In this document: positions 5,232-54,770 of the stretch, one piece after another
Layout of the letters: each line of letters starts with the position of its first letter
Position numbering within the stretch: position 1 is the stretch's first letter
Assembly: GCF_947568905.1 (NCBI RefSeq)
Contig: NC_079171.1
Span: 25,172,001-25,236,000 of the forward strand
Length of the DNA: 64,000 bases
DNA from: Ostrea edulis
Lineage: Eukaryota
Direction of reading: 5' to 3'
The notes under the pieces: generated by a model
What the model was told of the DNA's origin: nothing
What the model saw: the letters and a program-made list of their open reading frames with translations, nothing else
Database searches by the model: none
Made by a program: the position numbers and the translations under genes

Positions 5232-5904
5232 TTAGTTTATGGCCTCCACAGTAAATCGACCGGTTGTAGTTTTGGGGACGATTTTGATGTTAAACCTCAT
5301 GTTATTGAGGACCTGTGCATGGTTTTGTGCGTGTTGTGTGTAGTTGTCTAATACAATTTACAAGTATAGAACACAAGTATATGGTTGGCGTTTGATAAAT
5401 TTACAAGTATAGAACACAAGTATATGGTTGGCGATTGATGAAGTTTTTTTTACAAGTCCACGGTTGATGATATAAAAAAATTGCAAGTGTATAACACAAG
5501 TCCACGGTCAGTGTATGATTTGATGATTTGATGGTTTGATAAAGTTACAAGTATATATATAACACAACTACATGGTTAGCGGTTAGATTGAAGTCGCAAG
5601 AAAAACACCAGTCTAGCGTTCATGTTCTAAGTGCGTGTTTTAAATGGGTCAGGTATAACCCGACTAGATGGGTGGTTCAACTGAGTGCACTTTTGAGGTC
5701 AAAGGTCAAATTTTAGATAGCTCGTACTAGGACTGTGTCTGTCGTGCTATTTCGTAAACAAAATGGTAACAACCACAAAGTCGTGCACAAAAGAGATAGG
5801 GGATATTCTCTCCCGGATTTTTCTAAGTATGTGTTGGTGTTTTTGAAATAATATCGCAAGAAAACGTAAGTCCAGAGTTGGTAAGTAAAGTTTCGATAAA
5901 TAAC

Positions 5905-6585
5905 CAAGTTTAACCACCAAAAACTACACACAAAAACAGACAACTAGTGCCTTTCTAATGGATTTTTTCTAAGTATACGATGTACTGTGGAGGGCACATA
6001 GTGACGGTATATAATATATATATATTATTGGAGAGGCACGGAGGGCGGACCTCCACAGCTAAAAGATTGAACACGTTCGAGGCTGGGGATTCCCCGTTTC
6101 TTCGTTTGATAATGCTAAAGATATAGAACACAAGTCCAGGGTTGGTGTTTGATAAAGTTAAAAATATAGAACGCAAGTCCAGGGTTGGCGTTTGATAACG
6201 TTACAAGTTCGTGCTTGACGTTTGATAAAGTTTTAAAAATATAGAACACAAGTCCAAGGTTGGTGTTTTAAATTGAGACCACAGGAAACACAAGTTCGGG
6301 GTTGGGGTTCTAAGTGATATTATAAACAAACACGAGTTCACTTTTATATATGCTAAGTGCGTGCTTTAACGTTTACAACTATATATCCCAGTAAATTTTA
6401 AATAAAGACGAGTTTAACCACTAAAACTACACACAAAAACAGACAACTAGTGCCTTTCTAATGGATTTTTTCTAAGTATACGATGTACTGTGGAGGGCAC
6501 ATAGTGACGGTATATAATATATATATATTATTGGAGAGGCACGGAGGGTAACTCCGCAGTTAAAAAATCGAACGAGTCCGAGCTC
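5905..6585 (+). repeat. About 150-bp direct repeat carrying single origin-like units (6005-6080, 6508-6585) plus about 40-bp tandem repeats
   Basis: AACCACYAAAACTACACACAAAAACAGACAACTAGTGCC...GGCACGGAGGG occurs at about 5905 and about 6410. ATATAGAACRCAAGTCC units at 6120-6260. Confidence 0.8.
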
Positions 6586-6830
6586 GGGATGATCTTCGTA
6601 GCTCTATGTTTCCTTTTTATACAAACACTCGCTTACTGGAGTGAAACTTAGACCTTTTCTCAAAACCCAGTGTGTAATCCTATACACACACACCTCAACA
6701 ATAAGGAGTCATGTTTTTTTTAAGTTTCAAACATTTTATATAAAGCAATATCAAACAACATGAAATAAAATTTACAAGAACATATATACACACATCATAT
6801 AGCATTACAGAAATCAAATGTGACAAAAGT

Positions 6831-7270: not shown

Positions 7271-7293
7271 ACACATGAACATTGCACACACAA

Positions 7294-8286
7294 TTAAAAT
7301 AGTTCCTTGAAGGTTAGCGCCAACCGTCTGGCCTTCATTGATTTGGTAGCACTAACCTTCGATTTCGAAATGTTAGAGTGTGTGTACTTCGTCAGGGCTG
7401 AGTTTTGATGCTGTGGCGAGAACATCTCCGGCGAGCCACACACTCTCGTTGCCTGAATCACACGTTTAAGTTTATTGTCGTTGACCACGACTTTGGGTCC
7501 CGGTGTTCTTGCAGACTTCTTACCGCCCGTCGATTTCTCCGCCGTCGTCTTTAGTATCGCGTTATCCCTGCTGAGATTGTGTTTATTAATAAATTTCCCC
7601 AAGGTGTTGATGGCGGCGGATACCTCCGACAAATCCTTAAATTGCGCCCTGGACGCATCTATACAATTATCCAAGTCGGCCAGAATGGCCTTGATGCTAC
7701 CCAATCTACTGGATAGATCGTTTTCGATCTGTGTTGTACGGTCGTTCACTAACTCTTGCAGATGATTGACTTTAGTGTAATATACACTCTTGACGAAAAT
7801 GCTGCATTTGTCACCATATAAAAAATTGTTAAAAATGCACCACCTATTTCTAATGTGGTGATCAATGATGGGCAATGTCTCGTCCAGATATTTATCTTTG
7901 GGATTCGGTGTATCGATCGATATCCCACAGAAGAAGCACGTGGATTTGGAACAGCTGTTATCGTGGAATAATCCGGATGTTACAAGTTCGTCTATCACAT
8001 TAGCCTTCAATCCGCATCCAACATATGTCTCGCGCCTACGATCTTCGTGGGCGAAGAATTTGTGGGCCGAAGGATGAATGTATTCATGTTTCACACTATC
8101 TTCTGTCGTAATAACTTGGCGTACATTCCCATCAAACGTTAAGCTATAATCGTTTGCACTCTTCACAGTCTTACGGTCGTGCTGTCCCAATTTCACGGCA
8201 TCTGTCGATTTACCCCAAGGGTTCACACACTTAGAGTACGGCTTGGTCCGATTGTTGCCCAAAACTTTAGATTTCATCGCTGACAT
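7294..8286 (-). CDS. 330-aa protein with a divergent BIR-like zinc domain
   Basis: RRETY...LVTSGLF...CFFC-X22-H-X6-C (canonical BIR is CX2CX16HX6C). No RING. Confidence 0.75.
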   Translation of the reverse strand: MSAMKSKVLGNNRTKPYSKCVNPWGKSTDAVKLGQHDRKTVKSANDYSLTFDGNVRQVITTEDSVKHEYIHPSAHKFFAHEDRRRETYVGCGLKANVIDELVTSGLFHDNSCSKSTCFFCGISIDTPNPKDKYLDETLPIIDHHIRNRWCIFNNFLYGDKCSIFVKSVYYTKVNHLQELVNDRTTQIENDLSSRLGSIKAILADLDNCIDASRAQFKDLSEVSAAINTLGKFINKHNLSRDNAILKTTAEKSTGGKKSARTPGPKVVVNDNKLKRVIQATRVCGSPEMFSPQHQNSALTKYTHSNISKSKVSATKSMKARRLALTFKELF

Positions 8287-8435
8287 CGTGGTAAATGATT
8301 AAAAATGATACGATAATAATCTGTCTATAGTTATATTACATAAATCGCACAATACGTTGTGATAATATTATGCGCTACGGAGGATATATATAATCATTAT
8401 AAATCGAACACGTTCATTTTCTTTTACTTTCACTT

Positions 8436-10793
8436 TCACTTTCTCACTGTTGTCTTAATTCGTTTAGCTCTATCGGCCTTCTTCCGAGCATCAATACCTC
8501 GTTGTTTTATGACATGTCGAGCCTCTGCCAAATCTTCGGATACATGTCTAGCGAGTTGTGCAGCCGTAATCATAGTATATTTAAATTCTGGATCATTGTG
8601 ATGAGCTAAATTTTCCTCGTGGATCAGCTGATACCATTTAGCTTCGTTTAGTGCCATGATAGCAATAGCCATCGAACGATGCTTTAATGTTGCCTCACGA
8701 ATTTCGGGAGTATCACCGAACAATTTATCGAGAACATGGGTCATTAGCGAAGCTTTCTTCTGGCCGAGGTTACATAATGCACATGATTGCCGATCCCTTT
8801 GAGCCTCCTCGCGAAACTTGGCGCGCATACTGTTGCGGACTTCAGTAGACTTTCCGATATATCTTGATGGATTGTCGATACCATTTTTAAAACATTTGTC
8901 ACACAGGATCCAGAACTCATTTTTATCGCTGTTCTCGAAATATCTATCTAATACGGCATGTCTAGCACTGTTCGATGTTTCACCTATATCATGATTATCT
9001 AGAATCTGCCTAACCGCTTCTTTCTCAGCCTGGTTATCTATGCGTCTATTCGAGTTAGTATGTCTTGTGTAAAACTCGCTGAATGCCCACAACTCTGGCG
9101 GTTTGAACGGTAAGATTTGAGGTATCTTTATCGGTTTCGATGTTATTATGGCACTAGGCATATATGTACCAATACTTTTCCCCACTTCTTCCGGATCTGC
9201 TGTTTCGAAAAACTTTAACTTATTTGCCCACAGATCCTCGGTTAATCCGAAATTACTGAGGGCCTGACATTGGTACATTTGCGCCACTTGTTCCACTGTA
9301 GATATCGGTATTTTTTTGAACATCGATGTACGTTTGATTTTACTCAACCTTTTGTTGACGTACGCGATGCGTTCTGTGACATAATCATCACTCTTTTCAC
9401 TTTCATCGGCCGGTTCCGCAATGTGTAGAGATCTAAAATCGTCCGATACATCGGTTGCGACATCTATATCTGACAGTATACGATCTTGCACAAGGTTGTC
9501 ATTAGACGGACTCCCCCCTTCGAACATCATACTAGAGAAATCGTGATCGTGTAGATCCACGGTACCATGGTCGACTTGGGTAGGTGAATAACCGTTTCTG
9601 CTTTTAAGATCGCTCTCGTACAACGATCTTTGGGGAATGAACTCGATGTCTCCTATATCGACATTTGTCTCCTTCTGACCATTCTTCATTTCATAGTATT
9701 TTACTACTATTCTTTCCTGATCTAATTGGGCGGTTTTATTCGCTACCGACCGACTTCGTTTTCGTCCATCCCCAACACCAATCGCGACATCATCCTCTCG
9801 ATCTTCTTTAGTTTCCGCGAAGTGTTTGTTCACACTCCGAATTTGATCGTTCATCTGCTTCCACAGGTGTATGGTAGCTCCAGTTATGGAAGTTGTAACT
9901 ATTCTGATAGCGTGTGTGCTAATGACGTCTCGTCTTTCTGCCATTTCTTCTTCATTAAACTTAATGACCTTTATCAAAGTGTCACCAGTCACTCTCTTGG
10001 CAGCCGGATTCAATGGTATGGGTACGGCTACATATCGACCACGATCGTCCGGTCTCAACAACACATGTCCGTGTTCATCTAGTTCCGATATAGCTATCAA
10101 ATCCGCCATCATGTTAGCCAGGTATGAGATCGGAGGTGGCGAGTAGACTGTTTCACCTTTACTATTCAATAGCGTGGCGCTGAGCACCATCTGAGGAGAC
10201 AAGTATCTATCTGGATTATAAATTCCAGATACTACGTGCATGAATTCGAATAGTTTGTAATAGTTAAAGTGACCATAACCAGTAGCTCCTCTCGAAGTCT
10301 TCGGATACTTATGAAGCTTCATCATGTTGGTCACTATTCTAGTATACTGGTCGCCATTAAAGGCTTTCTTGGCACTTGCTACGGTAATCTGTTTAAAGAT
10401 ATCCCGTGGTATTTCCGATATACAAAAACCTTTCCTGAGGTTTGTTTCTAGTGGAATTCCAGAGAAGTTGTAGAAGGCTCTAAGTTTATGAGCTTCATCC
10501 ATATCTGGAGGACACACTCTCCTGTATCTGGTTTGTATACCTTCAGTATTAGCGATATGGTTGGCAACTTCATCGTACCCCAAGCGTTTAGCCATAGCTA
10601 CGCAGAAATGGGCATCATAATCAACTTTCATTTGATAACATCCGCCACACACCATAGCTTCACCATGACAGGCTGGTCGGATGAATATTTCGTCCGACTC
10701 ATTGTAGAACAGTAGCTTTTTATTCTTGGCGAAATATCGTTTGGCAGACATGATTATTTTGGTCGAAAATATCCTTACAACGACTGTGTTCAT
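8436..10793 (-). CDS. 785-aa hypothetical protein with Cys/His clusters
   Basis: Long ORF; CHGEAMVCGGC..HFC, LCDKC and CALC clusters. Confidence 0.85.
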   Translation of the reverse strand: MNTVVVRIFSTKIIMSAKRYFAKNKKLLFYNESDEIFIRPACHGEAMVCGGCYQMKVDYDAHFCVAMAKRLGYDEVANHIANTEGIQTRYRRVCPPDMDEAHKLRAFYNFSGIPLETNLRKGFCISEIPRDIFKQITVASAKKAFNGDQYTRIVTNMMKLHKYPKTSRGATGYGHFNYYKLFEFMHVVSGIYNPDRYLSPQMVLSATLLNSKGETVYSPPPISYLANMMADLIAISELDEHGHVLLRPDDRGRYVAVPIPLNPAAKRVTGDTLIKVIKFNEEEMAERRDVISTHAIRIVTTSITGATIHLWKQMNDQIRSVNKHFAETKEDREDDVAIGVGDGRKRSRSVANKTAQLDQERIVVKYYEMKNGQKETNVDIGDIEFIPQRSLYESDLKSRNGYSPTQVDHGTVDLHDHDFSSMMFEGGSPSNDNLVQDRILSDIDVATDVSDDFRSLHIAEPADESEKSDDYVTERIAYVNKRLSKIKRTSMFKKIPISTVEQVAQMYQCQALSNFGLTEDLWANKLKFFETADPEEVGKSIGTYMPSAIITSKPIKIPQILPFKPPELWAFSEFYTRHTNSNRRIDNQAEKEAVRQILDNHDIGETSNSARHAVLDRYFENSDKNEFWILCDKCFKNGIDNPSRYIGKSTEVRNSMRAKFREEAQRDRQSCALCNLGQKKASLMTHVLDKLFGDTPEIREATLKHRSMAIAIMALNEAKWYQLIHEENLAHHNDPEFKYTMITAAQLARHVSEDLAEARHVIKQRGIDARKKADRAKRIKTTVRK

Positions 10794-10914
10794 ATATTGA
10801 AAGTGATACTGTATTAATAATATAAAATCGGTTTATTACAAATAACATGTGTGCGGTATATAGTACAATTGACTACATAATACATTTTTGTTACAATTTG
10901 CATCAATGGTGATA

Positions 10915-11685
10915 TCACAAAATACTAAGAGGTGACTTGGATCTGGGGCGTTTTCTTGTCTTTTTCTTTGATTCTCTACGTGTTTTCGGTCGTGGTTGTG
11001 GTGCTGGTGATGATAATGCTGAAAATGTTATTAAATCGTCTTCTTCGTCCAACTCTACATCGCTCGTCTTCGACTGTATGTCTGCATCAAAAGACGTTGT
11101 TGTGATAGTTTCCACAACAGAGTTTTCGAGTTCCATATCATCGTCACACTGGTCGTCTCGACAGAGGTGTGGCGTCGTGCTCGGATTATCAACATCCTCT
11201 AATTGAATAGGACAATTGTCAAATCTCATTTTTTTCCGTATATTATCTAACGAACTCGTTGCTGAGCGTTTCTTTAATCTGGCGTCTCGTCGTCTAATGA
11301 TAGTCATAAACACATCGTGATCTTTCTCGGCATCGTACACTACGCTATGTAACTCGGGTACATCCTTAACGACGCTAGCTATTTTCACTTGAGTTACGGG
11401 TTCGACGTCAATATCTACATCATCATCATCACCATAATCTTCTTGGTATCCTAACATACAATGTATACTCGTCAGACCACTATTGTTAATTGCAGTATAG
11501 CCTCGCTTCTGTGGCGATCGTGTTTCATTTACATTGCTATCGTAATCACTATCGTTATCAGGATCGGCATAATCGTCTACTTCACGCTCGTCGTCGGCAT
11601 CATCGAAGCATTCGGTATTATCGTTTTCATGGTCGTCACCATATACAAATTCTTCGTCTGGATCCATGATGGTTTTTTTGTACAC
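10915..11685 (-). CDS. 256-aa acidic protein with basic NLS-like C-terminus
   Basis: ORF with promoter palindrome at about 11758. Confidence 0.8.
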   Translation of the reverse strand: MYKKTIMDPDEEFVYGDDHENDNTECFDDADDEREVDDYADPDNDSDYDSNVNETRSPQKRGYTAINNSGLTSIHCMLGYQEDYGDDDDVDIDVEPVTQVKIASVVKDVPELHSVVYDAEKDHDVFMTIIRRRDARLKKRSATSSLDNIRKKMRFDNCPIQLEDVDNPSTTPHLCRDDQCDDDMELENSVVETITTTSFDADIQSKTSDVELDEEDDLITFSALSSPAPQPRPKTRRESKKKTRKRPRSKSPLSIL

Positions 11686-12015
11686 ACTGTTGATTTGGGT
11701 TGTATATATGTTTTACTAATGTTGGACAACTTATAAATACAATGTGATATATTAAAGGTCGAACACGTTGGATATAAATATCGTTTCTAATAGTAAGTTT
11801 TTAAATCATCACATCCTCTGTGTTTGTAAGTTTGTAAAAATAACTGAAATTCTGTTTTAAATTTGTCGATACATATATTTAGCAAAACATCAAGCATACA
11901 CACGAATATATATAACAGTACAATACGATCATAAAATAAACTAATGTTGAATTATACACACGTTATCATAACATAAAGTTTTTCACAAATGATTCAGTTT
12001 GGCGAAGAGTCATAT

Positions 12016-13935
12016 TCAAGATTCATCGGCATCTTTGGACACTTTTGTAGATTTGGTGGAAATGGTTTCGGTAGTCTTGCGTTTACAACCACAAGTTGAC
12101 ACCCGTGGTCCTATAGGTCGGCGAACCAATGATTCACGATCGACATACCGCATATGCATATCATCGATGTGTAGGGGTTCGGAGAACTGATGGGTACGAG
12201 TTTCGGAAGTCTGAGACTCTGTATCATCTCGCTTGTTTTTCGCACCACTAAACCACCCGTTGGGGTCGTGATACGAATCGCGTTTATCATCTGAATCGTC
12301 CGAATCGGAATCTGAATCGGGGTATTCAGAATCCGAATGTTCTCGTTCTGAATCACGATCGCAGTTTTGATCGGCACGTCGATCATTTTGGTCGCCTGGT
12401 TGATATTCCATCTCCTCCTCACACTTGTTCATGCAATACATGTGACATGGTACTCTAAGTTCAACAATTTCGTGACCTTGATAGTACAGATCCTTAATCG
12501 GTGCTATTGGATGCAACTCAAAGTCGCGCAAGACCAACAGCATAGGTCTGTTCATTCGCTCCCGCATGCGAGCACGACCATCGTTTTTGATCATGTATCC
12601 GTTAGATAATACTGTCAGAATCCTGTCGAGCTTATGTCCGCGGCGTACCTGATTTAACGTGTCCCCAGACGACGTTTGTGCTACCACAATCACAATATCT
12701 GCGTTCCAAGCCGAGTCGAACGCGTATTCTACATTATCTATCCCAACAGATACTGTTAATAATTTATGAAATTCCGACCATTTCTTAACACTGTCGGTGA
12801 TGAAATGGTAATATTGGGTAGGCGTCGATATTATCAAGGGTTGTCCTTCGCCTGATAATGACAACGCGTTAAGGATCGTGTTGCTCACATGAGAACAGTT
12901 CTCTTGCTTGGAACCCGGCGATCTGATGGCTCGTATTCTGTTGGTATTCAGGTGATCATCTGAACCGGCTGTCATTACGTGTACTATTTCGGGGTCGATC
13001 GTGTATACGTCTGGATACGTGGGTTGCGTTACGCGATGCGCATGTACGGTAGTCGACACATTCATATCCACTTCAAATCGAGCCCCGGGTCTCGCCAGAC
13101 TCCTAAAATTCAAATCTTTAGCATCGATCCATGTCATGTCGGTTGGACCTACAGAAACAACCTCCGTGGATAGCACGATAATTTTGGGTTTCCCAACCTC
13201 CTTTAACCGGATGATGTCTGTTCCATTGATATAGGCATATCCCGAGTCAAGGCACACCATGGTTTTCCTGAGCACTTCTCGTTTCGATGAATTCGTGTCA
13301 CCAGAGTCAGCTTCCATTGGTGGGACGAGCAGGACTATGATGTCGTGTCCTTTGGCTTCTAACCATTTTTTACCAGCGTGAATGAAGGGTTTCTCGAGTC
13401 CCATAACATAGACCGTTTGGTTATCCGATCTGGTACTCGGTGCGATATCCGCATCAGCAACATTCGATTGTGGCAAAATTCTTTCGTGCTTGATCAACTG
13501 TACCAGTCTATGCCACTCAGATTCTGGGGCGACAATTCCAGTCTTCATCCTCGTGGAAGCTTTGGCGACCGTGTCTATGATGGCATCGATCGCAGCTCGA
13601 TTGTTCAGCATAGCATTCGCCCCGTTTAAAATCCTGTGCGCCATGTCCAATTCGAGCATTTCGAGCCTTAGATCACGATGCATATCATTAATGTAGAGTG
13701 TATCTGGAGGTTGGCTGTTAATGTAATGCTCGTGCATGCCCATACTTCGGATGAATTCTGGAATTAGCGATCCTGATCCGCGTGCCAATTCTTTGCGAAC
13801 CCTGGTCACCTCTTCCATAACGGTAACCCATCCACTACTTCTTCTCATTTTGCCGCATTGGTTGCTACACCCAAACATAGTGATTTTGTTGTGAATGTAT
13901 CGTATTTTATGAAATGAGACAAGATTATTCAGCAA
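12016..13935 (-). CDS. 639-aa protein with two degenerate CRESS-Rep SF3-helicase-like domains (likely start 13878)
   Basis: SDNQTVYVMG..VCLD..KPKIIVLS, and DNVEYAF..DIVIVV..VLSNGYMIK..RPMLLVL..HEIVEL, follow the motif order of Rep helicase domains. No Walker A GKS. Confidence 0.75.
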   Translation of the reverse strand: MLNNLVSFHKIRYIHNKITMFGCSNQCGKMRRSSGWVTVMEEVTRVRKELARGSGSLIPEFIRSMGMHEHYINSQPPDTLYINDMHRDLRLEMLELDMAHRILNGANAMLNNRAAIDAIIDTVAKASTRMKTGIVAPESEWHRLVQLIKHERILPQSNVADADIAPSTRSDNQTVYVMGLEKPFIHAGKKWLEAKGHDIIVLLVPPMEADSGDTNSSKREVLRKTMVCLDSGYAYINGTDIIRLKEVGKPKIIVLSTEVVSVGPTDMTWIDAKDLNFRSLARPGARFEVDMNVSTTVHAHRVTQPTYPDVYTIDPEIVHVMTAGSDDHLNTNRIRAIRSPGSKQENCSHVSNTILNALSLSGEGQPLIISTPTQYYHFITDSVKKWSEFHKLLTVSVGIDNVEYAFDSAWNADIVIVVAQTSSGDTLNQVRRGHKLDRILTVLSNGYMIKNDGRARMRERMNRPMLLVLRDFELHPIAPIKDLYYQGHEIVELRVPCHMYCMNKCEEEMEYQPGDQNDRRADQNCDRDSEREHSDSEYPDSDSDSDDSDDKRDSYHDPNGWFSGAKNKRDDTESQTSETRTHQFSEPLHIDDMHMRYVDRESLVRRPIGPRVSTCGCKRKTTETISTKSTKVSKDADES

Positions 13936-14061
13936 TCAGTGAAATGATCGTTCTCCAGTAAACCTGAGCTTGTTTATATATCCCAAATTTGGTTTATTAA
14001 CATGAACGTGTTAAATGCTTTAAATCGATCGGAGTTCAGCGAAAGGAGGGCAGCCCTTTGA

Positions 14062-14135
14062 CGGTGTATATATATATATATTATTAGAGCGGCACGGAGG
14101 GCAACTCCGCAGCTAAAGAATCGAACGTGTTCGAC
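14062..14135 (+). repeat. Single origin-like repeat unit between divergent Rep-derived genes
   Basis: CGGTG(TA)nTTATTAGAGCGGCACGGAGGGCAACTCCGCAGCTAAAGAATCGAACGTGTTCGA. Confidence 0.85.
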
Positions 14136-14242
14136 AGTCCTTTGGGTATATATACCAAAAATGAAAATCAAAATCAAAAACTCCAGTCTTAGAACATCGA
14201 TTGCTATTTATGTGTATACATATCTGCTTTTATTAAGAAACC

Positions 14243-14956
14243 ATGTCAGATTTGTCACAAGCAATGCTCGACGCCGACGCCATGGCTGAGTACGAAAATA
14301 ATATGATCATCAAGGCGGCCACTGATCTGAATTCTGGACGTTTGACATCTCAGATGTACGATATGTATGGAGATTGGTATGGGAGGAATATGTCGCGCAT
14401 AATGCTTAAAGCGAGCTATCTGAGGGATCCAGCGACGTACGTCGCAAGGGAGTTGAGACTTAAACGACCCATGTTACCCGATCTGAGAAATGCAGCCGTT
14501 CAGCGAAGGGGAACTCGTTTGGCAAACAGAGAGAAGGCGGTGAAGTCTGCACATGAAAGTAAACCGGAGGTTCACGACACGACCCAATCGATGTTACAAT
14601 GGCAGATTCGTGTGGCCGATTTAGCTGCGTTTACTAACTCTGACAATAGAGTCCTGTTTGTGGTGGGCAAGACTAAAGGACAAGGAAAATCTTGGATGGC
14701 GCAGTATTTGCACAAAACACTGAATTCAAACATGTTTCGTACGTGTTGTTCTGACTATTTGGCGCTATCTGGTAACATCACCAAGTATTCCGTGTTTGAC
14801 GTGGATTGTGACGAGTGCGATTTCGTCTACAGCACCTTCTACAGACACCTGGATGATACCGACGTGAAGGCTATAGTGTTTTGTAACTTCTTCCCGACGA
14901 AAATGCCGCATAGTGATGTGTTTTACATCGATCAGTACGATAAGTACCATGTGTGA
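14243..14956 (+). CDS. 237-aa CRESS-Rep-like oligomerisation plus SF3 P-loop protein lacking the endonuclease domain
   Basis: LQWQ...DNRVLFVVGKTKGQGKSWMAQYL (Walker A at 14666-14692), VFDV (Walker B), IVFCNFFP (motif C). Resembles the nanovirus-type Rep C-terminus. Confidence 0.8.
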   Translation: MSDLSQAMLDADAMAEYENNMIIKAATDLNSGRLTSQMYDMYGDWYGRNMSRIMLKASYLRDPATYVARELRLKRPMLPDLRNAAVQRRGTRLANREKAVKSAHESKPEVHDTTQSMLQWQIRVADLAAFTNSDNRVLFVVGKTKGQGKSWMAQYLHKTLNSNMFRTCCSDYLALSGNITKYSVFDVDCDECDFVYSTFYRHLDDTDVKAIVFCNFFPTKMPHSDVFYIDQYDKYHV

Positions 14957-15133
14957 GACATTTGTTATCTGTTATATGTATTGTCAATGTTTATGAACTT
15001 ATATTTCAATGTACGCATGTGTTTCAATAAAAATTGCTTGAATTCAATACGACTGTTCTGTGGTTAAAGTTTGGGTATAAAAATGATTCCGTTTTGATGA
15101 TCATGGAGGCTAATATGGAGGGCAGCCCTTTGA

Positions 15134-15320
15134 CAGTGTATATATATATATATTATTAGAGCGGCACGGAGGGCAACTCCGCAGCTAAATGATCGAACGT
15201 GTTCGAGACCTGGGGGAAACCCACTATCAAAAAATCGAAGCTGTTCGAGGTTTTAAGAGAACAATAGCTATGGAGGATGCCCTCCGTGCCTCTCCAATAA
15301 TATATATATATTATATACCG
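15134..15320. repeat. Palindromic pair of origin-like repeat units (P5)
   Basis: Inverted arms with the same spacer orientation as P1. Confidence 0.85.
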
Positions 15321-15577
15321 GCAATGTGGCCCTCCGTAGTTAATTGGATGGTGATAAAAATGTGTACCGTCGTATCAAATAACCGCTCATGAGAGAGAAA
15401 AAACTAGCTATATCTTTGTAACAATCGCTTTTATTTATATGTGTTCATTTTTATATATACGCATACATATATAGCAACGATGTATAATTACAATCAATCG
15501 TATCACACAGTGTTCTTAAAATTTCATAGCTTAATAACAGTCTTATACTATATGTTTCTGTAACAAATCTAGTTTCA

Positions 15578-16159
15578 TCACAGTCCAACTTTCATTCTAT
15601 ATATAGTCGACAGTTCCTCCCTAAGCATTCTAGATCTAGACAAACGGAGAGGTTTGGCCTCCGATAGTACGGACCGCTTTCTCTTCACTATCTTAGCCAA
15701 TTGTTCAATCAACCTATCCTGTTCGATGTTTGCAGACACGACTTCTAATAAGATGTCAATGACGTCGTCCGTGCGCAACTTGTGTATTTCTTCTGGCCTA
15801 CAACCATACATCTGTGCGATTGCTTGATGAATGGTATCCTTGTCGACGGTTTCAGTTATCATTTCTACAGTATGATCTCCCGACCCAAATCCACTTCCTT
15901 CATTCCCATTTTCTGTAGCAGGTTTAGCCTTGTGTCGAGAATCATCGTGATCTATGCTTATATGATGAACGTCCTTATGAGAATCCTTATGGTGATGGAT
16001 GTTAGGCTTGTGGATAAATTCACCCCCGGAACCTTCTTCAATCTCGACACGATGATCTTTATCTGCCACTAAAAAATCACCATCTATAGGTTGGCGAACG
16101 GCAGCAGATAATGCTCCACTCACACATAGTGCTACGATAACTACACCAAACTTAACCAT
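15578..16159 (-). CDS. 193-aa secreted protein (signal peptide, acidic Ser-Gly motifs, KRKRS)
   Basis: MVKFGVVIVALCVSGALSA; EEGSGG; EGSGFGSGD. Confidence 0.8.
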   Translation of the reverse strand: MVKFGVVIVALCVSGALSAAVRQPIDGDFLVADKDHRVEIEEGSGGEFIHKPNIHHHKDSHKDVHHISIDHDDSRHKAKPATENGNEGSGFGSGDHTVEMITETVDKDTIHQAIAQMYGCRPEEIHKLRTDDVIDILLEVVSANIEQDRLIEQLAKIVKRKRSVLSEAKPLRLSRSRMLREELSTIYRMKVGL

Positions 16160-16244
16160 GTTTTCTTGTGAATGTACTTTTCGACAGAATAATGACTAGT
16201 CATGTTTTACGACAACATCATCTCATCCATTTAAATAAAAGAAA

Positions 16245-17084
16245 TTACACAGATTGACTACATAGCATGTCGTAATCTGTTAGAAGTGCAACTATGTCGT
16301 TTATACATTTGAGAATAAATGTTACGTCGTCTATAGACATATCCTTGTACTGTTCCTGCACGAGTATGCCAGCTACCGCCATGGCTTCCTTAAACCCGGT
16401 CATGGGCATGTTTATAAACCTATCGTTATTTAACACATCTAACTTAGTCAAGAGTGGTTCTACTGCCTTAACGCCCACCAAGTTGGTAAAGTGTTCGCCG
16501 TTTGCGTTACAGTTCGGTCCAGCACCATCTAACAACGCTCCCAAGTTATGTATAAAGGCTCCAATATGTGCGTTTTTTTTATACGACAACTTAGTACTCG
16601 ATGCCAATCGCTTGTCTCTAGCTTCTTGTATAGCAGCGATAAACCCGTTCTTTCTCATGCGAACGTTGTCGTTGAGATTATGAGGACCGTATGCTACCAA
16701 ATCCCTAATGATATAGCGCTTATCTTTAGACTTCCCACGCCTTTGCAACTTTCCGGTCTCTTCATATTCCATCCCATTACGTTTCATTCTCTTGACAACT
16801 GCTATAGGATCCAAAGTCGGAACTATCCAAGTTATAGTCGGACATAGTCTAGTCAAGCTTTTCCAACGGCGTTTTAGTTCTAATTGCACGTACCCGGTTA
16901 GAACAGGAACGTCATTGTCACCGAGAGTCTTAACGACTAACCTATAATACGAGTCTAGAGATGATAATTTCTCGTAGTCGCTATAATCCCAATCTACGAT
17001 TCGAAAAATCCAATTACACTTGGGGCAATCCATTTTGTAAAAAAAAATATCTGTGACACCCTCTTGCAGATGAATTGAATACAA
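16245..17084 (-). CDS. Protein with inactivated CRESS-Rep HUH-endonuclease-like N-terminal domain (likely start 17033)
   Basis: NWIFRIVD (motif I), PVLTGYVQL (motif II, PHLQG equivalent with His lost), KRRWKSLTRLCP..W, VKRMKRNG..EETG (motif III position, Tyr lost). Confidence 0.75.
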   Translation of the reverse strand: MYSIHLQEGVTDIFFYKMDCPKCNWIFRIVDWDYSDYEKLSSLDSYYRLVVKTLGDNDVPVLTGYVQLELKRRWKSLTRLCPTITWIVPTLDPIAVVKRMKRNGMEYEETGKLQRRGKSKDKRYIIRDLVAYGPHNLNDNVRMRKNGFIAAIQEARDKRLASSTKLSYKKNAHIGAFIHNLGALLDGAGPNCNANGEHFTNLVGVKAVEPLLTKLDVLNNDRFINMPMTGFKEAMAVAGILVQEQYKDMSIDDVTFILKCINDIVALLTDYDMLCSQSV

Positions 17085-33483: not shown

Positions 33484-33691
33484 TTTTTGGGTATGGTTGT
33501 TAGCGCGTCGTTGTTCGTTTGTGGCTCTGGATGGGTGTTATAATCGCCGTTTTTGCTGGGTACGATGCATGTATCCTGCGCGTGTGTTTGATAAAAATAA
33601 ATCTCCGTCTGGAAGACTAGTGCTTTCTATCTGGGAGAAGTTTTGGTGCTTATGGTGGTTCCCGAGTGCCCTCCGGAGGCCAGCTCTCTGA

Positions 33692-33745
33692 CGGTGTATA
33701 TATATATATATTATTAGAGCGGCACGGAGGACGGCCCTCCGCAGA
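33692..33745 (+). repeat. Single origin-like repeat unit within a ~140-bp direct repeat (partner at about 34110-34250)
   Basis: CTTTCTATCTGGGAGAAGTTTTGG...GGACGGCCCTCCGCAGACAG is duplicated. Confidence 0.8.
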
Positions 33746-33829
33746 CAGTGTTGGTTTGGTGTTTCTGTGCGAGAGCACGTTTTTGTGTAAGAAGAAGAAT
33801 GTCGTTTTTTTGGGTTTATAACAAGTTTT

Positions 33830-33961: not shown

Positions 33962-34183
33962 CTTGATATATTTTGTTGTGGTTGGAATATGGTTGCGTGC
34001 GTGTGTATATATTTTATATATATTTTATATAAATAATATTGACGACTCGGTGTGATGCCCGATATACAGAGGTAAATATATATATACGGTTGATGCGAGA
34101 ATATGTACGTGTTCCTTTCTATCTGGGAGAAGTTTTGGTGCTTATCGTGGCTACCGAGTGCCCTCCGGAGGCCAGCTCTCTGA

Positions 34184-34368
34184 CGGTGTATATATATATA
34201 TATTATTAGAGCGGCACGGAGGACGGCCCTCCGCAGACAGCCTCGATAAAACCTCGAACAGCTTCGATTTTTTAGAAGTGGGTTTTCCCCGCTGCTAGAA
34301 CACGTTCGATTCTTTAGCTGCGGAGTTGCCCTCCTTGCCGCTCTAATAATATATATATATATACACCG
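34184..34368. repeat. Palindromic pair of origin-like units (P7), core inverted relative to P1
   Basis: Spacer reads GTGGGTTTTCCCC instead of GGGGAAAACCCAC. Confidence 0.85.
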
Positions 34369-35077
34369 TCAGAAAGCTGTCCTCCGGAGGTCACTCGGTC
34401 GGTCGTGTTGATGTGGATGATTTTGGCGTAAAACTCGAGTTATTGAGGCCTTTTGCTTGCCTTTGTGTCGTGTCTCTGTGTGTGTTTTTGGGTAGTTGTT
34501 TAATAAATTTTCTAACAAGTATAGAACACAAGCATACCATCGACGTTTGATAAGTCGCAAGTATAGAAACACAAGCATACGGTTGGTGATTTTGATGAAG
34601 TTTTTTTTACAAGCGCACATATCATTTGCCGAACTTGCTAGTGTGTGTATCTGCATCTATATAATCTCTATATATCTGACAAAAACTCCATGGTCTTAGC
34701 GTGCGTGTTCTAAGTGCGTGTTATATACGCAGAGAGAGAGAGAGATGGTCAGGCATAACCCGACTACATGGGTGGTTCAACCGAGTGCACTTTTGAGGTC
34801 GAAGGTCGGAGTTTTTCAAGATAGATAACTCGTGATAGGACTGTGTTCTGTCGCGCGATTTCTCTAAGTATGACTTGGTGGTTTTTTTTTGGAAATGATA
34901 GCATCGCCCAGAACACAACCTCAGTCCAGAGTTACTAAGTACCAAAACTTCGACGAACGACCGAGTTCGACTACCCAAAAAAAATACACATAAAAACAAG
35001 CAACTAGTGCCTTTCTGATGGGTTTTTCGTAAGTTTATCATTTCGCTGTGGAGTCTATAAGAGGGCAGCTCTTTGCC

Positions 35078-35152
35078 AGTGTATATATATATATATTATT
35101 AGAGCGGCACGGAGGGCAACTCCGCAGCTAAAATAATCCAACGTGTTCGAGC
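35078..35152 (+). repeat. Single origin-like repeat unit
   Basis: Same consensus as 14062. Confidence 0.85.
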
Positions 35153-35392
35153 TCGGGATGATTGTCTTCGCAGCTCTATGTATTTCCCAGTTTCAACCCA
35201 CAAAATCCCCCTTCGAGAAAACCAGTGCATAATCTTTATACACTCCAACAATAAAGAGTCGTGTTTTGTTTAGTTTCAAACTTTTATATATAAAACATAT
35301 CAACGAAATACAATACAACAAGAACATATATACATACATACAATAAAAATCATCACAGGAATTCATTCGATAAGTTTTACACAAAAAAAAGT

Positions 35393-38014
35393 CTATTTGC
35401 GGGGTCCCAGGACGCGTCTGGTCGTTAATCTTAGAGTCCGCGCACGAACTACGGGTGGTTCGGGGGCTTCGGGCATTTCGGGGTCTTCGGGGACTTCGGG
35501 AACTACGGGCACCTTTGGAGCTACCGACACTTTGTCCACTACAGGGGCTGCGGAAACATCGTCTATGTCCGGCAAATCGTTTTCGCCGGTATTATCGAAT
35601 TGTACAGTAACGGGAGCTTCGGCACTGGCTCCCACATTCTCGCACACATCGTCAGCTGCAGTCGGCGCATTCACCACGATCACATTCGCATCAACCACGG
35701 GCTCCACCGGCCTGGTGTAGCGTATGGGGCGACCCCGACGACGACGACGAGTACCGGCACTAACACACCTCCTTCGGCGAGCGGGAGGATTCCTCTCCTC
35801 GTAAGTGAAGTCGCCATCGATGCCCTCACGCACCACCACGTTGTCGGAATCGTCGTCACTACTCAAGTCTCTGTATGCGTTAGGGTCGCGCAAGGCCGGG
35901 TGGACACTCTCCAACAGGGCCTCACGCAACGCTGCATCGTCCTCGTCCACAACACGCTTTCGCTTACGACTCATCGGGGTCACACGACACATCAGCTTAT
36001 CCGACTGCCTACACCTGTACTCTGCCGAACACACATTGCATCTACACATGGGTCCGCGAGATCTACCATCGGCGCCGTCCCCATTGTAGACCGACGGCAA
36101 AACGTCGTGACACACGAATTGGATTATCGGTGTGCACTTGGGGTAAGTAACATCCTGCTCACGAAACACGACCACTACTGGCTTGTGTGTCAGAAACATC
36201 AATTCGGTACCATCATCAACAGGCGTAAATCCCCCAGATATAAACTTCAAGAATTTCACCAAGTTGAAATCGTCACCTCCCACATCGTCACAACTCGTGT
36301 ACACGAAGATAAACTTGGCGTTCTGCACCTTCTTGAACACGCGATGGAAATTCTTCGGGGAAGGAGCGGCCACACACACTAAGTCCTTCAGCGGACACTC
36401 CAAGAAATCCCCGAAGTACGCATAGAAGTCGCGCCATTCACTCTGGGGTGCACTGATGGAATATCTCTCGCCCGCACTGGCACTCAGGGTCACGCGCATC
36501 GAGGAGAACCAGGCGGGGACAGACTTCTCTGCATACTGCCGAAGAATCAGCTGGGTGTTCAAGAATTCGTGATGACTCGAACCCAGCTGAATCGCGGTCT
36601 CGTACTCCGTTCGCAGTGGACCAGTCAACGCCAAATGTGTATCTCCGTTCTCGCCAGGCTTTTCGATGGCATCGCGATCACGATCGGCGTTAATGTAATA
36701 CCGCAGTCCATCGTCGTTTTCTCTCAACTGCTCCAGTTTGCCTTCGGCCGCACCAAGTTCACCCAAACTTGCACATATTAACTTGGGGTTCTCTTTAAAA
36801 CCCGGAGCCACCGATACGGGCGACTTGTGTAAGACATAGCGTTTTACAAAACCGTCACATCCCGCCAATTCCATCACCACATTATCCTCATCATCCTCGT
36901 CATCATCATCAACAACCTCAACCACGTACACGTCCTCCTCGTCATCATCACCATCGATCTCCACAGCTGCAGTCTTAGCCGCGGACACGGGACTAAAATC
37001 CTCACAATCATCTTCGGTATCTCCGTCGTACTCCATGTGAACACTGCTGTCCATATCGTCACTGTACAATCCACTATCCACACTCACGTTACAATCTCTA
37101 TCGTCATCTTCGTCGTCCACAACACAAATATTCTCATCCTCGGAATCAGACTCCCCAAAAGCAGGATCAGACGCAAAGTTTTTGATTACGCACCCGAAGT
37201 AGTTCGGCCGGTTTGTCAACAAACAAACGCTCTTCGCACGAGAACCCTCGGGAGGAGGAGGACAATTCACGTCCGTCTCCGCACAGTCATTGGGGTCCTC
37301 GTGCACCCACGATGCATCGTATACCCTCGGAAGCCAATTGCCAATGTGCCCGTCCGTATCCGGGTAATCGAAGCGAGGGCCAGCGGGACTCACACTATCA
37401 TTGTTATTGCTCGGAGACAAGTACTCCCGCTCGTCCTCGTCACTACTTATGTCCGAATACTCCCCGCCAGACACGGAACCATCATTCACACGTCCCGCCA
37501 CACTGCTACCATCCTCGTCCTCGGCATCGCTGATGTCCGAGTAAGTCGAGGGGTCGCCCACCTCGCAGGTAACGGCGGCAACGGCCACACTCTCGTCCTT
37601 ATCCTCCGTCTTCTTATCCTCCTCCGGTAAGAACACATCGTCACTCAACGTGGTTATATCGCTAATGTCACTGTCGTCATCACTATCCATATCGCTGGCA
37701 CAACTATCACAACTGCAGCTCTCGGAACTCTCGGAACCATCGGAACCATCGGGAGTCTCGGGCACAACACCGTCGCCGAAATCGACACCCTCCACGTCCA
37801 CATCCGGACTCTCAACATCGCCACCACTGCTCTCGCTGTCGCTAACGGTCGCACCCGCTGCAGGCTCGCCATCGGACAACTTAGCCAACAGCGAATCCAC
37901 GTCCTCGTGAGCATCCATCCAACTGGTCAGATCAACCCGGTTCTCCTGCTCGGCCGCTTCCAACAGATGACCACCTCCCATAACAAACGCCATCAAGTCA
38001 ACAGTGTCAGCCAT
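35393..38014 (-). CDS. 873-aa highly acidic putative regulatory protein with AT-hook-like motif
   Basis: Longest ORF in the window, GC-rich, RRRRRGRP near the C-terminus. Four tandem palindromes upstream. Confidence 0.85.
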   Translation of the reverse strand: MADTVDLMAFVMGGGHLLEAAEQENRVDLTSWMDAHEDVDSLLAKLSDGEPAAGATVSDSESSGGDVESPDVDVEGVDFGDGVVPETPDGSDGSESSESCSCDSCASDMDSDDDSDISDITTLSDDVFLPEEDKKTEDKDESVAVAAVTCEVGDPSTYSDISDAEDEDGSSVAGRVNDGSVSGGEYSDISSDEDEREYLSPSNNNDSVSPAGPRFDYPDTDGHIGNWLPRVYDASWVHEDPNDCAETDVNCPPPPEGSRAKSVCLLTNRPNYFGCVIKNFASDPAFGESDSEDENICVVDDEDDDRDCNVSVDSGLYSDDMDSSVHMEYDGDTEDDCEDFSPVSAAKTAAVEIDGDDDEEDVYVVEVVDDDDEDDEDNVVMELAGCDGFVKRYVLHKSPVSVAPGFKENPKLICASLGELGAAEGKLEQLRENDDGLRYYINADRDRDAIEKPGENGDTHLALTGPLRTEYETAIQLGSSHHEFLNTQLILRQYAEKSVPAWFSSMRVTLSASAGERYSISAPQSEWRDFYAYFGDFLECPLKDLVCVAAPSPKNFHRVFKKVQNAKFIFVYTSCDDVGGDDFNLVKFLKFISGGFTPVDDGTELMFLTHKPVVVVFREQDVTYPKCTPIIQFVCHDVLPSVYNGDGADGRSRGPMCRCNVCSAEYRCRQSDKLMCRVTPMSRKRKRVVDEDDAALREALLESVHPALRDPNAYRDLSSDDDSDNVVVREGIDGDFTYEERNPPARRRRCVSAGTRRRRRGRPIRYTRPVEPVVDANVIVVNAPTAADDVCENVGASAEAPVTVQFDNTGENDLPDIDDVSAAPVVDKVSVAPKVPVVPEVPEDPEMPEAPEPPVVRARTLRLTTRRVLGPRK

Positions 38015-39050: not shown

Positions 39051-40164
39051 TGGGGGACGAGTATGCCGGTAGCGATAGTCGCGGGACGGATAACCGACCG
39101 ACGACTAGGGCCGAATGTACACCGACTGCGGGCACACTGGTCGCATGCACACTAGCGAACCTGTACACTCCCGCTACTTACAGTACTCTCAACAAAACTA
39201 CAGGGTTAAAAAAGGCCCTGCTCTGGATTTGGTCGTTCTTGACTGGGAATGGTGTTTAAGAGTGATGTCTTGATGGGGGACGTTTTTGAGTGGGGGGACT
39301 GTGTTTTTTAAAAAGCTGGGACTGGTTTTATGTTTGGTAGTAGTAGTAGTTAGTAACAGCAGCAGTTGTTTCTGATCGGAGAGATAGATGCGGATGTGGT
39401 TTGTAGAGAGTAGACTGAGCAGAAGTAAAATCGGTGCGTGTTATACACTCGGACGAGGGTTGGTCGAACGGGTGATTAATTGGGTGTTTTTGGTGTATTT
39501 TGGGCCGGATTGGGTCGTTCCGATGGATCGCTGTGGAGGGTAATATGGAGGGCAGAGCTTTGCCGGTGTATATATATATATATTATTAGAGCGGCACGGA
39601 GGGCAACTCCGCAGCGGTAAATATCGAACGTGTTCGACAGGGGGTGTGGTCGGTGGGGATTCCCCGTTGGCGAAACCGGGGCGAGTTGGCGGTAAGAGAT
39701 ATGTAGATATGTAGAGAGAGATATGTAGAGAGAGATATGTAGCAGCCAAATGGGGGGTGGAATAGAATAGATGTTCACGGGGAAGTTTCCGTGCACTCGG
39801 TACTCCAATTCGCATCCATTCCGACGCGATTTGCCACCCATTCACCACACTAACGGCATGGTGCGACGGGGAACGACGACGGGGAACCATGGCGGACAGC
39901 GGAGGACGACGGAGGCCAGCTCTCTGCGGTGTATAATATATATATATTATTAGAGCGGCAAGGAGGGCGGACCTCCATAGCGAACGTTAAAACAACTAAC
40001 GGCCGGACACTAAACACGAACACATTAAGCATATATATCGATACCGGTGTATAACTGCGAATGGGAAAAACTTTAATATTATATAGAAAATATAATTGAC
40101 TTAATGATAGTGTTTTTTTTACACTGTTCGCATTATCAGCTGCTTAAATTGATTCCGCATAACA

Positions 40165-45446: not shown

Positions 45447-46067
45447 TGAAACTAGATTTGTTACAGAAACATATAGTATAAGACTGTTATTAAGCTATGA
45501 AATTTTAAGAACACTGTGTGATACGATTGATTGTAATTATACATCGTTGCTATATATGTATGCGTATATATAAAAATGAACACATATAAATAAAAGCGAT
45601 TGTTACAAAGATATAGCTAGTTTTTTCTCTCTCATGAGCGGTTATTTGATACGACGGTACACATTTTTATCACCATCCAATTAACTACGGAGGGCCACAT
45701 TGCCGGTATATAATATATATATATTATTGGAGAGGCACGGAGGGCATCCTCCATAGCTATTGTTCTCTTAAAACCTCGAACAGCTTCGATTTTTTGATAG
45801 TGGGTTTCCCCCAGGTCTCGAACACGTTCGATCATTTAGCTGCGGAGTTGCCCTCCGTGCCGCTCTAATAATATATATATATATACACTGTCAAAGGGCT
45901 GCCCTCCATATTAGCCTCCATGATCATCAAAACGGAATCATTTTTATACCCAAACTTTAACCACAGAACAGTCGTATTGAATTCAAGCAATTTTTATTGA
46001 AACACATGCGTACATTGAAATATAAGTTCATAAACATTGACAATACATATAACAGATAACAAATGTC

Positions 46068-54769: not shown

Positions 54770-54770
54770 G

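What the first reader, a model, noticed from the sequence alone, without database searches (positions are those of the whole stretch)
34184..34368. Flip/flop inversion of the palindrome core between positionally equivalent sites
P1 (5044-5231) and P7 have equivalent flanks in the same orientation (TTTCTATCTGG..GAGAAGTTTTGG on the left, GTTATTGAGG on the right). Yet the spacer of P7 is the reverse complement of P1 (GCAACTCCGCAG.TAAA.AATCGAACGTGTTCTAG...GGGGAAAACCCACTT...TCGAA). This implies recombination or hairpin resolution between the arms, as in parvovirus flip/flop termini or an invertible promoter switch.
Basis: seen in the sequence. Interest (0 to 1): 0.75.

Follow-up and report, generated by a model that had tools for sequence, protein, structure and literature searches.

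The report
Flipped core in a viral-type palindrome
Two old duplicate copies of a ~250-bp DNA palindrome, in a virus-like island inside a flat-oyster chromosome, carry their central ~105 bp in opposite orientations while the flanks run the same way; this is a real but single historical inversion between the palindrome arms, with no evidence here for an active flip/flop switch.

Summary
Outside the palindromes, P1 (5028-5247) and P7 (34153-34399) align only in direct orientation (left flank z=15, right flank z=16). Their spacers align only as reverse complements (78% identity, z=15.3, against z=1.9 direct).

The window is Ostrea edulis chromosome 8 (OX387711.1, a HiFi assembly). It holds a dense, intronless, mostly ORFan island with IAP and RING genes and a 9.6-kb inverted repeat. 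This looks like an integrated large DNA virus whose taxon I could not resolve.

The palindromes belong to a dispersed family of 16 half-units (13 unique). Each has a GGAGG box, a (TA)n run, a conserved 22-nt arm and a small hairpin. A full palindrome is one conserved type-A half and one diverged type-B half placed head to head. P1 and P5 read A|B; P7 reads B|A.

P1 and P7 are old paralogues (flanks 67-72% identical), so one inversion since the duplication explains the data. Arm-to-arm exchange is the likely cause, because the arms have been homogenised within each palindrome. A parvovirus-like flip/flop or a regulated invertible switch is not supported:
- the sites are internal, not terminal;
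- no Rep or recombinase gene is in the window;
- the mirror copies of P5 agree exactly;
- the B|A state of P7 predates a 97.6% local duplication.

Both orientations at one locus could not be tested with the data available.

The parts
34153..34399 (.). P7, full palindrome in state B|A. Arms 34153-34222 and 34330-34399 (70 nt, 94% complementary); spacer 34223-34329 (107 nt).
   Evidence: The DNA hairpin folds at -89.7 kcal/mol, z=-16.5.
5028..5247 (.). P1, full palindrome in state A|B. Perfect inner arms 5053-5085 and 5188-5220 (33 nt); weaker outer arms 5028-5064 and 5211-5247 (76%); spacer 5086-5187 (102 nt).
   Evidence: Fold -61.7 kcal/mol, z=-10.3.
15114..15338 (.). P5, full palindrome in state A|B, inside the large inverted repeat. 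Arms 15142-15175 and 15278-15311; spacer 15176-15277. Its flanks are unrelated to those of P1 and P7.
45686..45910 (.). Mirror copy of P5 in the second copy of the large inverted repeat. It reads B|A on the + strand only because the whole 9.6-kb repeat is inverted.
4745..5021 (+). Left flank of P1, homologous in direct orientation to 33851-34152, the left flank of P7.
   Evidence: 67% identity, z=15.
34400..34613 (+). Right flank of P7, homologous in direct orientation to 5248-5456, the right flank of P1. Both carry copies of an ACAAGTATAGAACACAAG repeat.
   Evidence: 72% identity, z=16.
33669..33772 (+). Solo type-B half-unit, part of a 126-bp duplicate (33623-33748) of the P7 left flank plus B arm.
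35054..35157 (+). Solo type-A half-unit, positional equivalent of solo 6486-6589 and in the same orientation. It is conserved in a diverged relative, L008.
5983..6086 (+). Solo half-unit that starts like type B, followed by a GGGGATTCCCC motif.
6486..6589 (+). Solo type-A half-unit. The segment 6390-6590 is an 89% tandem duplicate of 5884-6090.
14039..14142 (+). Solo type-A half-unit in the large inverted repeat, between divergent ORFs. Its mirror copy is at 46887-46979 (-).
39541..39644 (+). Solo type-A half-unit followed by GGGGATTCCCC, in the 2.1-kb ORF-free stretch 38015-40164.
39905..40008 (+). Solo B-like half-unit upstream of ORF 40165-41244.
35393..38014 (-). 873-aa acidic/basic ORFan next to the P7 region. 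A truncated paralogue at 6831-7289 sits next to the P1 region.
   Evidence: Its only relative in 1.84 billion representatives is P0007.
7271..16894 (.). Large inverted repeat, copy 1. Copy 2 is 44130-53747. Identity is 99.93%; the copies differ by one 6-bp indel and one SNP.

Best explanation
P1, P5 and P7 belong to a dispersed family of non-coding repeat elements in a virus-like island integrated in Ostrea edulis chromosome 8. The basic unit is a half-unit of about 100-130 nt. It comprises an outer GGAGG box, a (TA)7-9 run, an almost invariant arm TTATTRGAGMGGCAMGGAGG, and a short CGGAG(G)/C(C)TCCG hairpin. A full palindrome is a well-conserved type-A half and a diverged type-B half placed head to head around a GGGGAAAACCC centre. 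The 2-3-kb regions holding P1 and P7 are old direct duplicates. Since that duplication, one of the two palindromes inverted its core. The likely route is a crossover between its 33-70-nt inverted arms, or a template switch across the hairpin that the arms form on single-stranded DNA during replication. The product persisted because the element is nearly symmetric, so orientation probably does not matter to its function. I infer that function to be cis-acting, as a replication origin or an enhancer (hr-like), comparable to the stem-loop taken as the OsHV-1 origin. Shown: the inversion, the family anatomy, arm homogenisation, intergenic location, and conservation in a diverged relative. Inferred: the mechanism of inversion, that it happened once, and the ori/enhancer role.
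For: Core inverted, flanks direct. Family of 16 arm copies where shuffles give none. A/B anatomy: (A halves 80-88% alike among the three palindromes, B halves 67-69%). Arm-to-arm exchange: both arms of P1 carry GGAGAG and both arms of P7 carry AGAGCG. P1 inner arms are 33/33 identical and P7 arms are 94% over 70 nt, while P1 and P7 flanks are only 67-72% alike. Strong hairpin potential: z=-9 to -16.5. The neighbouring solo A half-units (6486-6589 and 35054-35157), which have no partner arm, keep the same orientation in both duplicates. This fits an inversion that needs two arms. The region is recombination-prone: there are two independent tandem duplications of about 500 bp that involve half-units. 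All units lie in ORF-free stretches of an island that is 68% long intronless ORFs. Constraint: in a relative with 71% nucleotide identity (L008), the non-coding 35108-35392 is 86% conserved and the A half is 44/46 identical. Context: OX387711.1 is O. edulis chromosome 8, assembled from 38x HiFi reads, so reads span the 250-bp element. OsHV-1 has a stem-loop regarded as its probable origin, and recombination breakpoints map near it and near a (TA)n microsatellite (PMC9836095; bioRxiv 10.1101/2023.08.23.554398).
Against: Only one pair of positionally equivalent palindromes exists, so 'once' is parsimony, not measurement. The breakpoints are not mapped. One arm site (GGAGGA vs GGAGGC beside CCTCCGGAGG) travels with the half type and hints that the whole palindrome turned, but it is a single site. 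The three spacers are about equally distant from each other (76-78%), so an old conversion from another copy cannot be told apart from an in-place inversion. The viral nature and taxon of the island rest on gene density, ORFans, IAP/RING genes and the inverted-repeat architecture. No hallmark gene lies in the window. The ori/enhancer role is by analogy only. The (TA)n runs sit in the stems, not at the apex as in HSV-type origins.
Confidence: 0.6

Rival explanations
1. Orientation-swapping ectopic gene conversion. A break in P1 or P7 was repaired from another family member, for example P5 or its mirror copy. Because the two arms are alike, the donor could pair in either orientation and deliver its spacer reversed.
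For: Arms are near-identical across loci: A half-units are 92-97% alike among 14045, 15117, 34298-34385, 35061 and 39547. The family looks homogenised above flank level. Mirror-oriented donors exist because of the 9.6-kb inverted repeat.
Against: P7 spacer identity to P5 (76%) is no higher than to P1 (78%), so there is no sign of a recent donor. Arm variants are region-specific: all three units in the left duplicate carry GGAGAG, while those around P7 carry AGAGCG. That fits vertical descent better than import.
Confidence: 0.2
2. Ongoing flip/flop. Each palindrome exists in both orientations in the replicating element, through frequent arm recombination or cruciform or hairpin resolution, and the assembly shows one arbitrary state per locus.
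For: The arms are long enough for recombination and the hairpins are very stable. Herpes-type genomes invert segments flanked by inverted repeats, with OsHV-1 isomers equimolar (PMC9836095). Two of the four palindrome copies in the window read each way.
Against: The two P5 copies are exact mirror images, which is a 50% chance under free flipping. The B|A state of P7 was copied into a duplicate that has since diverged by 2.4%. The sequence sits in a host chromosome and is replicated as host DNA. In six short-read assemblies the P1 left flank runs unbranched through the outer arm to the (TA)n run, so at least the outer arms do not flip.
Confidence: 0.1
3. A foldback or MITE-like mobile element inserted, or excised and re-inserted, at the same site in the two duplicates in opposite orientations.
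For: It has terminal inverted repeats and no coding capacity. Copies are dispersed at non-homologous sites such as P5.
Against: The position is identical in both duplicates, with direct flank homology running up to the CCTCCGGAGG boundary. I saw no clear target-site duplication at P5 or P7. Most copies are half-units rather than complete elements. A half-unit sits at the orthologous place in a relative with 71% identity.
Confidence: 0.05
4. Assembly artefact: the spacer orientation between identical arms was resolved wrongly.
For: Short-read graphs do break at these repeats. Contigs L001-L006 all end in the (TA)n run, and L008 ends at the conserved arm of the solo A half-unit.
Against: The assembly is from 38x PacBio HiFi reads with hifiasm, QV 59 (PMC10979132). 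Reads of many kb span a 250-bp element. P1 and P7 spacers differ by 22%, so each was read in its own context.
Confidence: 0.03

Closest known systems
Hairpin-associated small inversions (loop 'flip-flop' between short inverted repeats, best known from chloroplast non-coding DNA; from my own knowledge, not checked in a paper here)
   Same: The inverted piece is exactly the spacer between two inverted arms, the flanks are untouched, and the arms form a stable hairpin.
   Different: The arms here are much longer (33-70 nt) and the spacer is about 105 nt. The context is a virus-like island in an animal chromosome. Recurrence is not shown: there is one event.
Herpesvirus lytic-origin palindromes, including the stem-loop taken as the OsHV-1 origin (PMC9836095; bioRxiv 10.1101/2023.08.23.554398)
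   Same: Both are intergenic palindromes with A+T-rich tracts, present in several copies including within large inverted repeats, next to a large acidic/basic ORF, and associated with (TA)n and local recombination.
   Different: No replication function was tested and the virus family is unresolved. The (TA)n runs lie within the stems on either side of a 105-nt asymmetric core rather than at the dyad centre. There is no sequence match to any public viral contig.
Homologous regions (hrs) of baculoviruses and other large invertebrate DNA viruses (from my own knowledge)
   Same: Both are dispersed families of imperfect palindromes and partial units in intergenic DNA, homogenised among loci, and recombination-prone.
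   Different: The unit size and sequence differ. There are no tandem arrays of palindromes, only singles and solo halves.
Parvovirus and poxvirus flip/flop terminal hairpins
   Same: Two forms exist that are reverse complements of each other between inverted arms.
   Different: Those hairpins are terminal, are generated at every replication round by hairpin transfer or telomere resolution, and both forms coexist at one end. The sites here are internal, no nickase or resolvase gene was found, and the two forms are at two old paralogous loci.
Recombinase-driven invertible switches (fim, hin type)
   Same: A segment bounded by inverted repeats is found in both orientations.
   Different: There is no recombinase gene in the window. 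The arms are long and homogenised (homologous, not site-specific). No promoter was shown in the segment, and no two states were seen at one locus.

Membership tests
Parvovirus-type flip/flop hairpin | Lies at the end of a linear genome | tested here: not met
   Both palindromes have homologous, co-linear DNA on both sides and lie inside a 77-Mb chromosome.
Parvovirus-type flip/flop hairpin | Rep/NS1-type nicking protein encoded by the element | tested here: not met
   No such domain in the 30 long ORFs scanned against Pfam. This covers the window only.
Parvovirus-type flip/flop hairpin | Both orientations coexist at the same site | not testable with these tools
   Short-read contigs break at the (TA)n run or at the arm. 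No long reads are available here.
Invertible promoter switch | Segment bounded by inverted repeats | tested here: met
   Arms of 33-70 nt, 94-100% complementary.
Invertible promoter switch | Dedicated site-specific recombinase nearby | tested here: not met
   Pfam scans found only BIR and RING domains.
Invertible promoter switch | Promoter inside the segment that drives a flanking gene in one orientation only | not tested
   No eukaryotic promoter tool or transcript data was available. The homologue of the 145-aa ORF beside P1 is degenerate beside P7.
Hairpin-associated small inversion | The inverted tract equals the spacer between inverted arms, with flanks unchanged | tested here: met
Hairpin-associated small inversion | Recurrent, homoplasious flipping among lineages | not testable with these tools
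   Only one positionally equivalent pair exists. The relative L008 stops before the P7 equivalent.
Viral origin or hr-type repeat element | Multi-copy, intergenic, palindromic, with an A+T-rich tract | tested here: met
Viral origin or hr-type repeat element | Conserved above background in related genomes | tested here: met
   A half 44/46 identical and adjacent non-coding DNA 86% conserved, against 71% overall in L008. This is one relative and one unit.
Viral origin or hr-type repeat element | Supports replication or enhances transcription | not testable with these tools
   Needs an experiment.
Malacoherpesvirus-like provirus (context) | Herpes hallmark genes (DNA polymerase, terminase, capsid) | tested here: inconclusive
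   None lies in the 64-kb window. Only IAP and RING domains, ORFans and an inverted-repeat architecture were found.
MITE or foldback transposon | Target-site duplication and insertion at unrelated sites | tested here: inconclusive
   No clear duplication was seen by eye at P5 or P7. P5 is at an unrelated site, but most copies are half-units.

The most novel reading that the evidence does not exclude
The palindromes are internal replication origins of a still-active oyster DNA virus, and their cores flip at each round of replication through hairpin or cruciform processing. Every locus would then exist in both orientations. That would be a flip/flop so far known only from genome termini.
Probability: 0.1. 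Interest if true: 0.55.

Novelty: new member of a known kind. Interest (0 to 1): 0.3.

Why it matters
The inversion itself is ordinary: a spacer between long inverted arms turned once between two old duplicates. The value lies in the context. The window holds an apparently undescribed, ORFan-rich, virus-like island in the flat-oyster genome. Its cis-element family is well defined and conserved in a second, 71%-identical relative. If the island derives from an oyster herpes-like virus, these elements are candidate origins or enhancers. They would also be convenient markers for tracing recombination in a group of viruses that cannot be cultured.

Tried and rejected
**Searches for other copies that would show orientation**
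- The arm pattern found nothing in viral contigs. Two arm patterns found nothing in metagenome contigs.
- The search for related loci with the 873-aa and 785-aa ORFs in viral contigs found nothing.
- Exact-protein look-ups for eight window ORFs were not on record. Nineteen ORFs were absent from the cluster collection.
- The 145-aa ORF beside P1 gave six Logan contigs (L001-L006). All end inside the left (TA)n run. They cannot show spacer orientation, because the arms exceed the assembly k-mer and recur 16 times.
- L008 stops at the solo A half-unit, before the P7 equivalent.
- All 12 encoding-contig look-ups are now used.

**Identifying the island**
- The 785-aa ORF has no relatives.
- The conserved part of the 873-aa ORF has one relative among 1.84 billion representatives and no match to a solved structure.
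- Its AlphaFold model had pLDDT 30 and was discarded without a fold search.
- Rfam found only a tRNA.
- Paper searches for the run accession found nothing.

**Ideas considered and dropped**
- Half-units as unidirectional TATA promoters: only 2-3 of 13 point at a gene start.
- P5 as an outgroup to polarise the inversion: its flanks are unrelated.
- Mapping the breakpoints from arm variants: only one informative site.

Full report
**1. What is there**

The two sites were read directly. At both, the quoted left-flank string (4975-4999; 34116-34139) and right-flank string (5301-5310; 34439-34448) lie on the same strand. Between them is a long palindrome.
- P7 has 70-nt arms (34153-34222 and 34330-34399, 94% complementary) around a 107-nt spacer.
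- P1 has perfect 33-nt inner arms (5053-5085 and 5188-5220), weaker outer arms (76%), and a 102-nt spacer.

Self-BLAST gives a direct match of 4745-5456 to 33851-34613 and an inverted match of 5022-5235 to 34391-34180. Global alignments against shuffles separate the parts cleanly:

| Segment | Direct | Reverse complement |
|---|---|---|
| Left flank | 67% identity, z=15.0 | z=-5.2 |
| Right flank | 72% identity, z=16.0 | z=-2.1 |
| Spacer | 51% identity, z=1.9 | 78% identity, z=15.3 |

The spacers are only weakly self-complementary (z about 2.4), so their orientation is meaningful.

**2. Where the window comes from**

One IAP ORF of the window is recorded on NCBI GCA_947568905.1, OX387711.1, a 77.1-Mb sequence. 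[quoted passage not shown] The assembly was built with hifiasm from 38x PacBio HiFi reads and has 35.5% G+C.
- From 2.9 to 54.7 kb the window is 68% long intronless ORFs, rising to 83% inside the repeat, with about 41% G+C.
- Most ORFs have no Pfam family. The exceptions are BIR and RING domains.
- A 9.6-kb inverted repeat (7271-16894 and 44130-53747) is 99.93% identical and brackets 27 kb.

I read this as an integrated large-DNA-virus-like island. Integrated malacoherpes-like genomes are known in lancelets (PMC12373286), and bivalve genomes are rich in endogenous dsDNA viral regions (bioRxiv 10.1101/2025.04.19.649669). No hallmark gene lies in the window, so the taxon is open. The window has no N runs and nothing human.

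**3. The repeat family**

The arm motif TATTATTRGAGMGGCACGGAGG occurs 16 times where shuffles give none. Thirteen of these are unique once the mirror copies in the large repeat are set aside. Aligned, each copy is a half-unit with four parts:
- an outer GGAGG box;
- about 10 variable bases ending in TGACGGTG;
- a (TA)7-9 run;
- the almost invariant arm, followed by a small hairpin.

The hairpin comes in two types. Type A reads GCAACTCCGCAG.TAAA.AATCGAACGTGTTC. Type B reads RCGGCCCTCCRCAG followed by diverged sequence. A halves are 80-88% alike among the three palindromes; B halves are only 67-69% alike.

A full palindrome is one A and one B placed head to head round GGGG(G)AAA(A)CCCAC. P1 and P5 read A|B. 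P7 reads B|A. The copy at 45686-45910 reads B|A only because it is the mirror of P5. All units lie in ORF-free DNA. Three ORF-free stretches of 2 kb (4847-6830, 33376-35392, 38015-40164) hold nine of them. The three palindromes fold as DNA hairpins far better than shuffles (z=-16.5, -10.3 and -9.0).

**4. P1 and P7 are old paralogues**

The homology extends over about 3944-7289 and 33397-35900. It includes a truncated copy (6831-7289) of the C-terminus of the 873-aa ORF (35393-38014) and paralogous ORFs at 2861-3889 and 32539-33375. Flank identity is 67-72%, far below the 99.93% of the large repeat. There has therefore been ample time for a single inversion.

The flanks of P5 are unrelated to those of P1 and P7. 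No outgroup tells which of the two turned.

**5. Mechanism**

*Evidence for arm-to-arm exchange.* P1 and P7 differ at two diagnostic arm positions (GGAGAG vs AGAGCG), yet both arms within each palindrome carry the same variant. P1 inner arms are 33/33 identical and P7 arms are 66/70 identical. The arms have therefore been homogenised against each other since the duplication. This is the kind of interaction that yields an inversion when resolved as a crossover, or when a polymerase switches template across the hairpin.

The solo A half-units next door (6486-6589 and 35054-35157), which have no partner arm, kept their orientation. Both regions also show independent tandem duplications of about 500 bp that involve half-units: 5884-6090 with 6390-6590 at 89%, and 33623-33748 with 34115-34240 at 97.6%. 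The DNA is evidently recombination-prone.

*Breakpoints.* Direct homology of the flanks runs up to the CCTCCGGAGG box on both sides. One arm site just inside it (GGAGGA with A halves, GGAGGC with B halves) travels with the spacer. This hints that the whole palindrome turned. It is one site only, and outer-arm identities do not settle it.

**6. Evidence against an active switch**
- The two P5 copies are exact mirror images. The only differences in 9.6 kb are a 6-bp indel at 8426-8431 and a SNP at 11672.
- The 97.6% duplicate at 33623-33748 already carries the P7 left flank joined to a B half, so the B|A state predates it.
- In six short-read assemblies from other runs (SRR25445033, 49, 61, 68; ERR13868508, 515) the P1 left flank continues unbranched through the outer arm and stops only in the (TA)n run.
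- No Rep, resolvase or recombinase domain was found.

None of this excludes low-level flipping of the inner spacer. Short-read graphs cannot phase it.

**7. Evidence for function**

A second, diverged relative exists. L008 (run SRR25445061) is 71% identical to 38681-35108 and encodes an intact 883-aa orthologue with 70% amino-acid identity. Downstream of that gene the non-coding DNA is 86% conserved, and the A half-unit at the contig end is 44/46 identical. That is well above the background.

Combined with the multi-copy, intergenic, palindromic, A+T-tract anatomy, I favour a cis-acting role as replication origin or enhancer. The parallel is the OsHV-1 stem-loop regarded as its probable origin, near which recombination breakpoints and a (TA)n microsatellite map. 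This is analogy, not a test.

One lead: the palindrome centres read GGGAAAACCC, and two solo units are followed by GGGGATTCCCC. These are four of the few Rel/NF-kB-type consensus matches in the window. The consensus is recalled from memory, and the copies are related by descent, so they are not independent.

**8. Verdict**

The parvovirus and promoter-switch analogies fail the features that could be tested.

| Explanation | Confidence |
|---|---|
| Single historical arm-mediated inversion of a near-symmetric viral-type cis-element | 0.6 |
| Orientation-swapping conversion from another family member | 0.2 |
| Ongoing flip/flop | 0.1 |
| Mobile element | 0.05 |
| Assembly artefact | 0.03 |

The decisive test is counting orientations in the existing HiFi reads. 

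Noticed in passing
window 7271-16894 and 44130-53747: A 9.6-kb inverted repeat, 99.93% identical (one 6-bp indel at 8426-8431 and one SNP at 11672), brackets 27.2 kb of unique sequence. This resembles a herpes-type repeat/unique/repeat layout inside an oyster chromosome.
   Followed up: partly
window 54770-54844 (-): A tRNA-Ile (anticodon AAT) lies just outside the right copy of the large repeat. It could be a host gene marking the edge of the island or an integration site.
   Followed up: no
window 55019-62827 (-): A tandem array of four intronless BIR (two with RING) IAP ORFs, 70-82% identical in DNA, spaced about 2 kb apart. A fifth IAP lies at 21557-23350, with best outside hits to scallop and amphioxus IAPs at 29-45% identity.
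   Followed up: partly
window 5124-5133, 34280-34289, 6085-6095, 39655-39665: Rel/NF-kB-type motifs sit at equivalent places in the repeat family. GGGAAAACCC is at the centre of P1 and P7, and GGGGATTCCCC follows two solo half-units. This is a possible enhancer lead only.
   Followed up: partly
L008:1-3557 (Logan SRR25445061): A second, 71%-identical relative of window 35108-38681 has an intact 883-aa orthologue. It comes from the same run that also holds a 99%-identical copy of the P1 region, so two related islands or viruses are present in one sample.
   Followed up: partly
window 35108-35392: The non-coding DNA downstream of the 873-aa ORF is 86% conserved in L008, more than the coding region. 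It contains a further imperfect palindrome at 35258-35319.
   Followed up: partly
window 6831-7289 (-): A truncated paralogue of the C-terminus of the 873-aa ORF abuts the boundary of the large inverted repeat at 7271. This suggests a past shift of the repeat boundary.
   Followed up: no
window 5355-5439, 6103-6203, 34513-34590: 43-nt repeats containing ACAAGTATAGAACACAAG lie to the right of P1, of P7 and of the solo unit at 6033. They are further candidate protein-binding repeats.
   Followed up: no
window 36000-40000: A G+C-rich stretch (51-53%) holds a perfect 62-nt tandem repeat of 2.9 copies at 38734-38914, plus several other short tandem arrays, between the divergent 873-aa and 359-aa ORFs.
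   Followed up: no
window 1-2860: This stretch has no long ORF and 38% G+C. It may be host DNA or the degenerate edge of the island.
   Followed up: no
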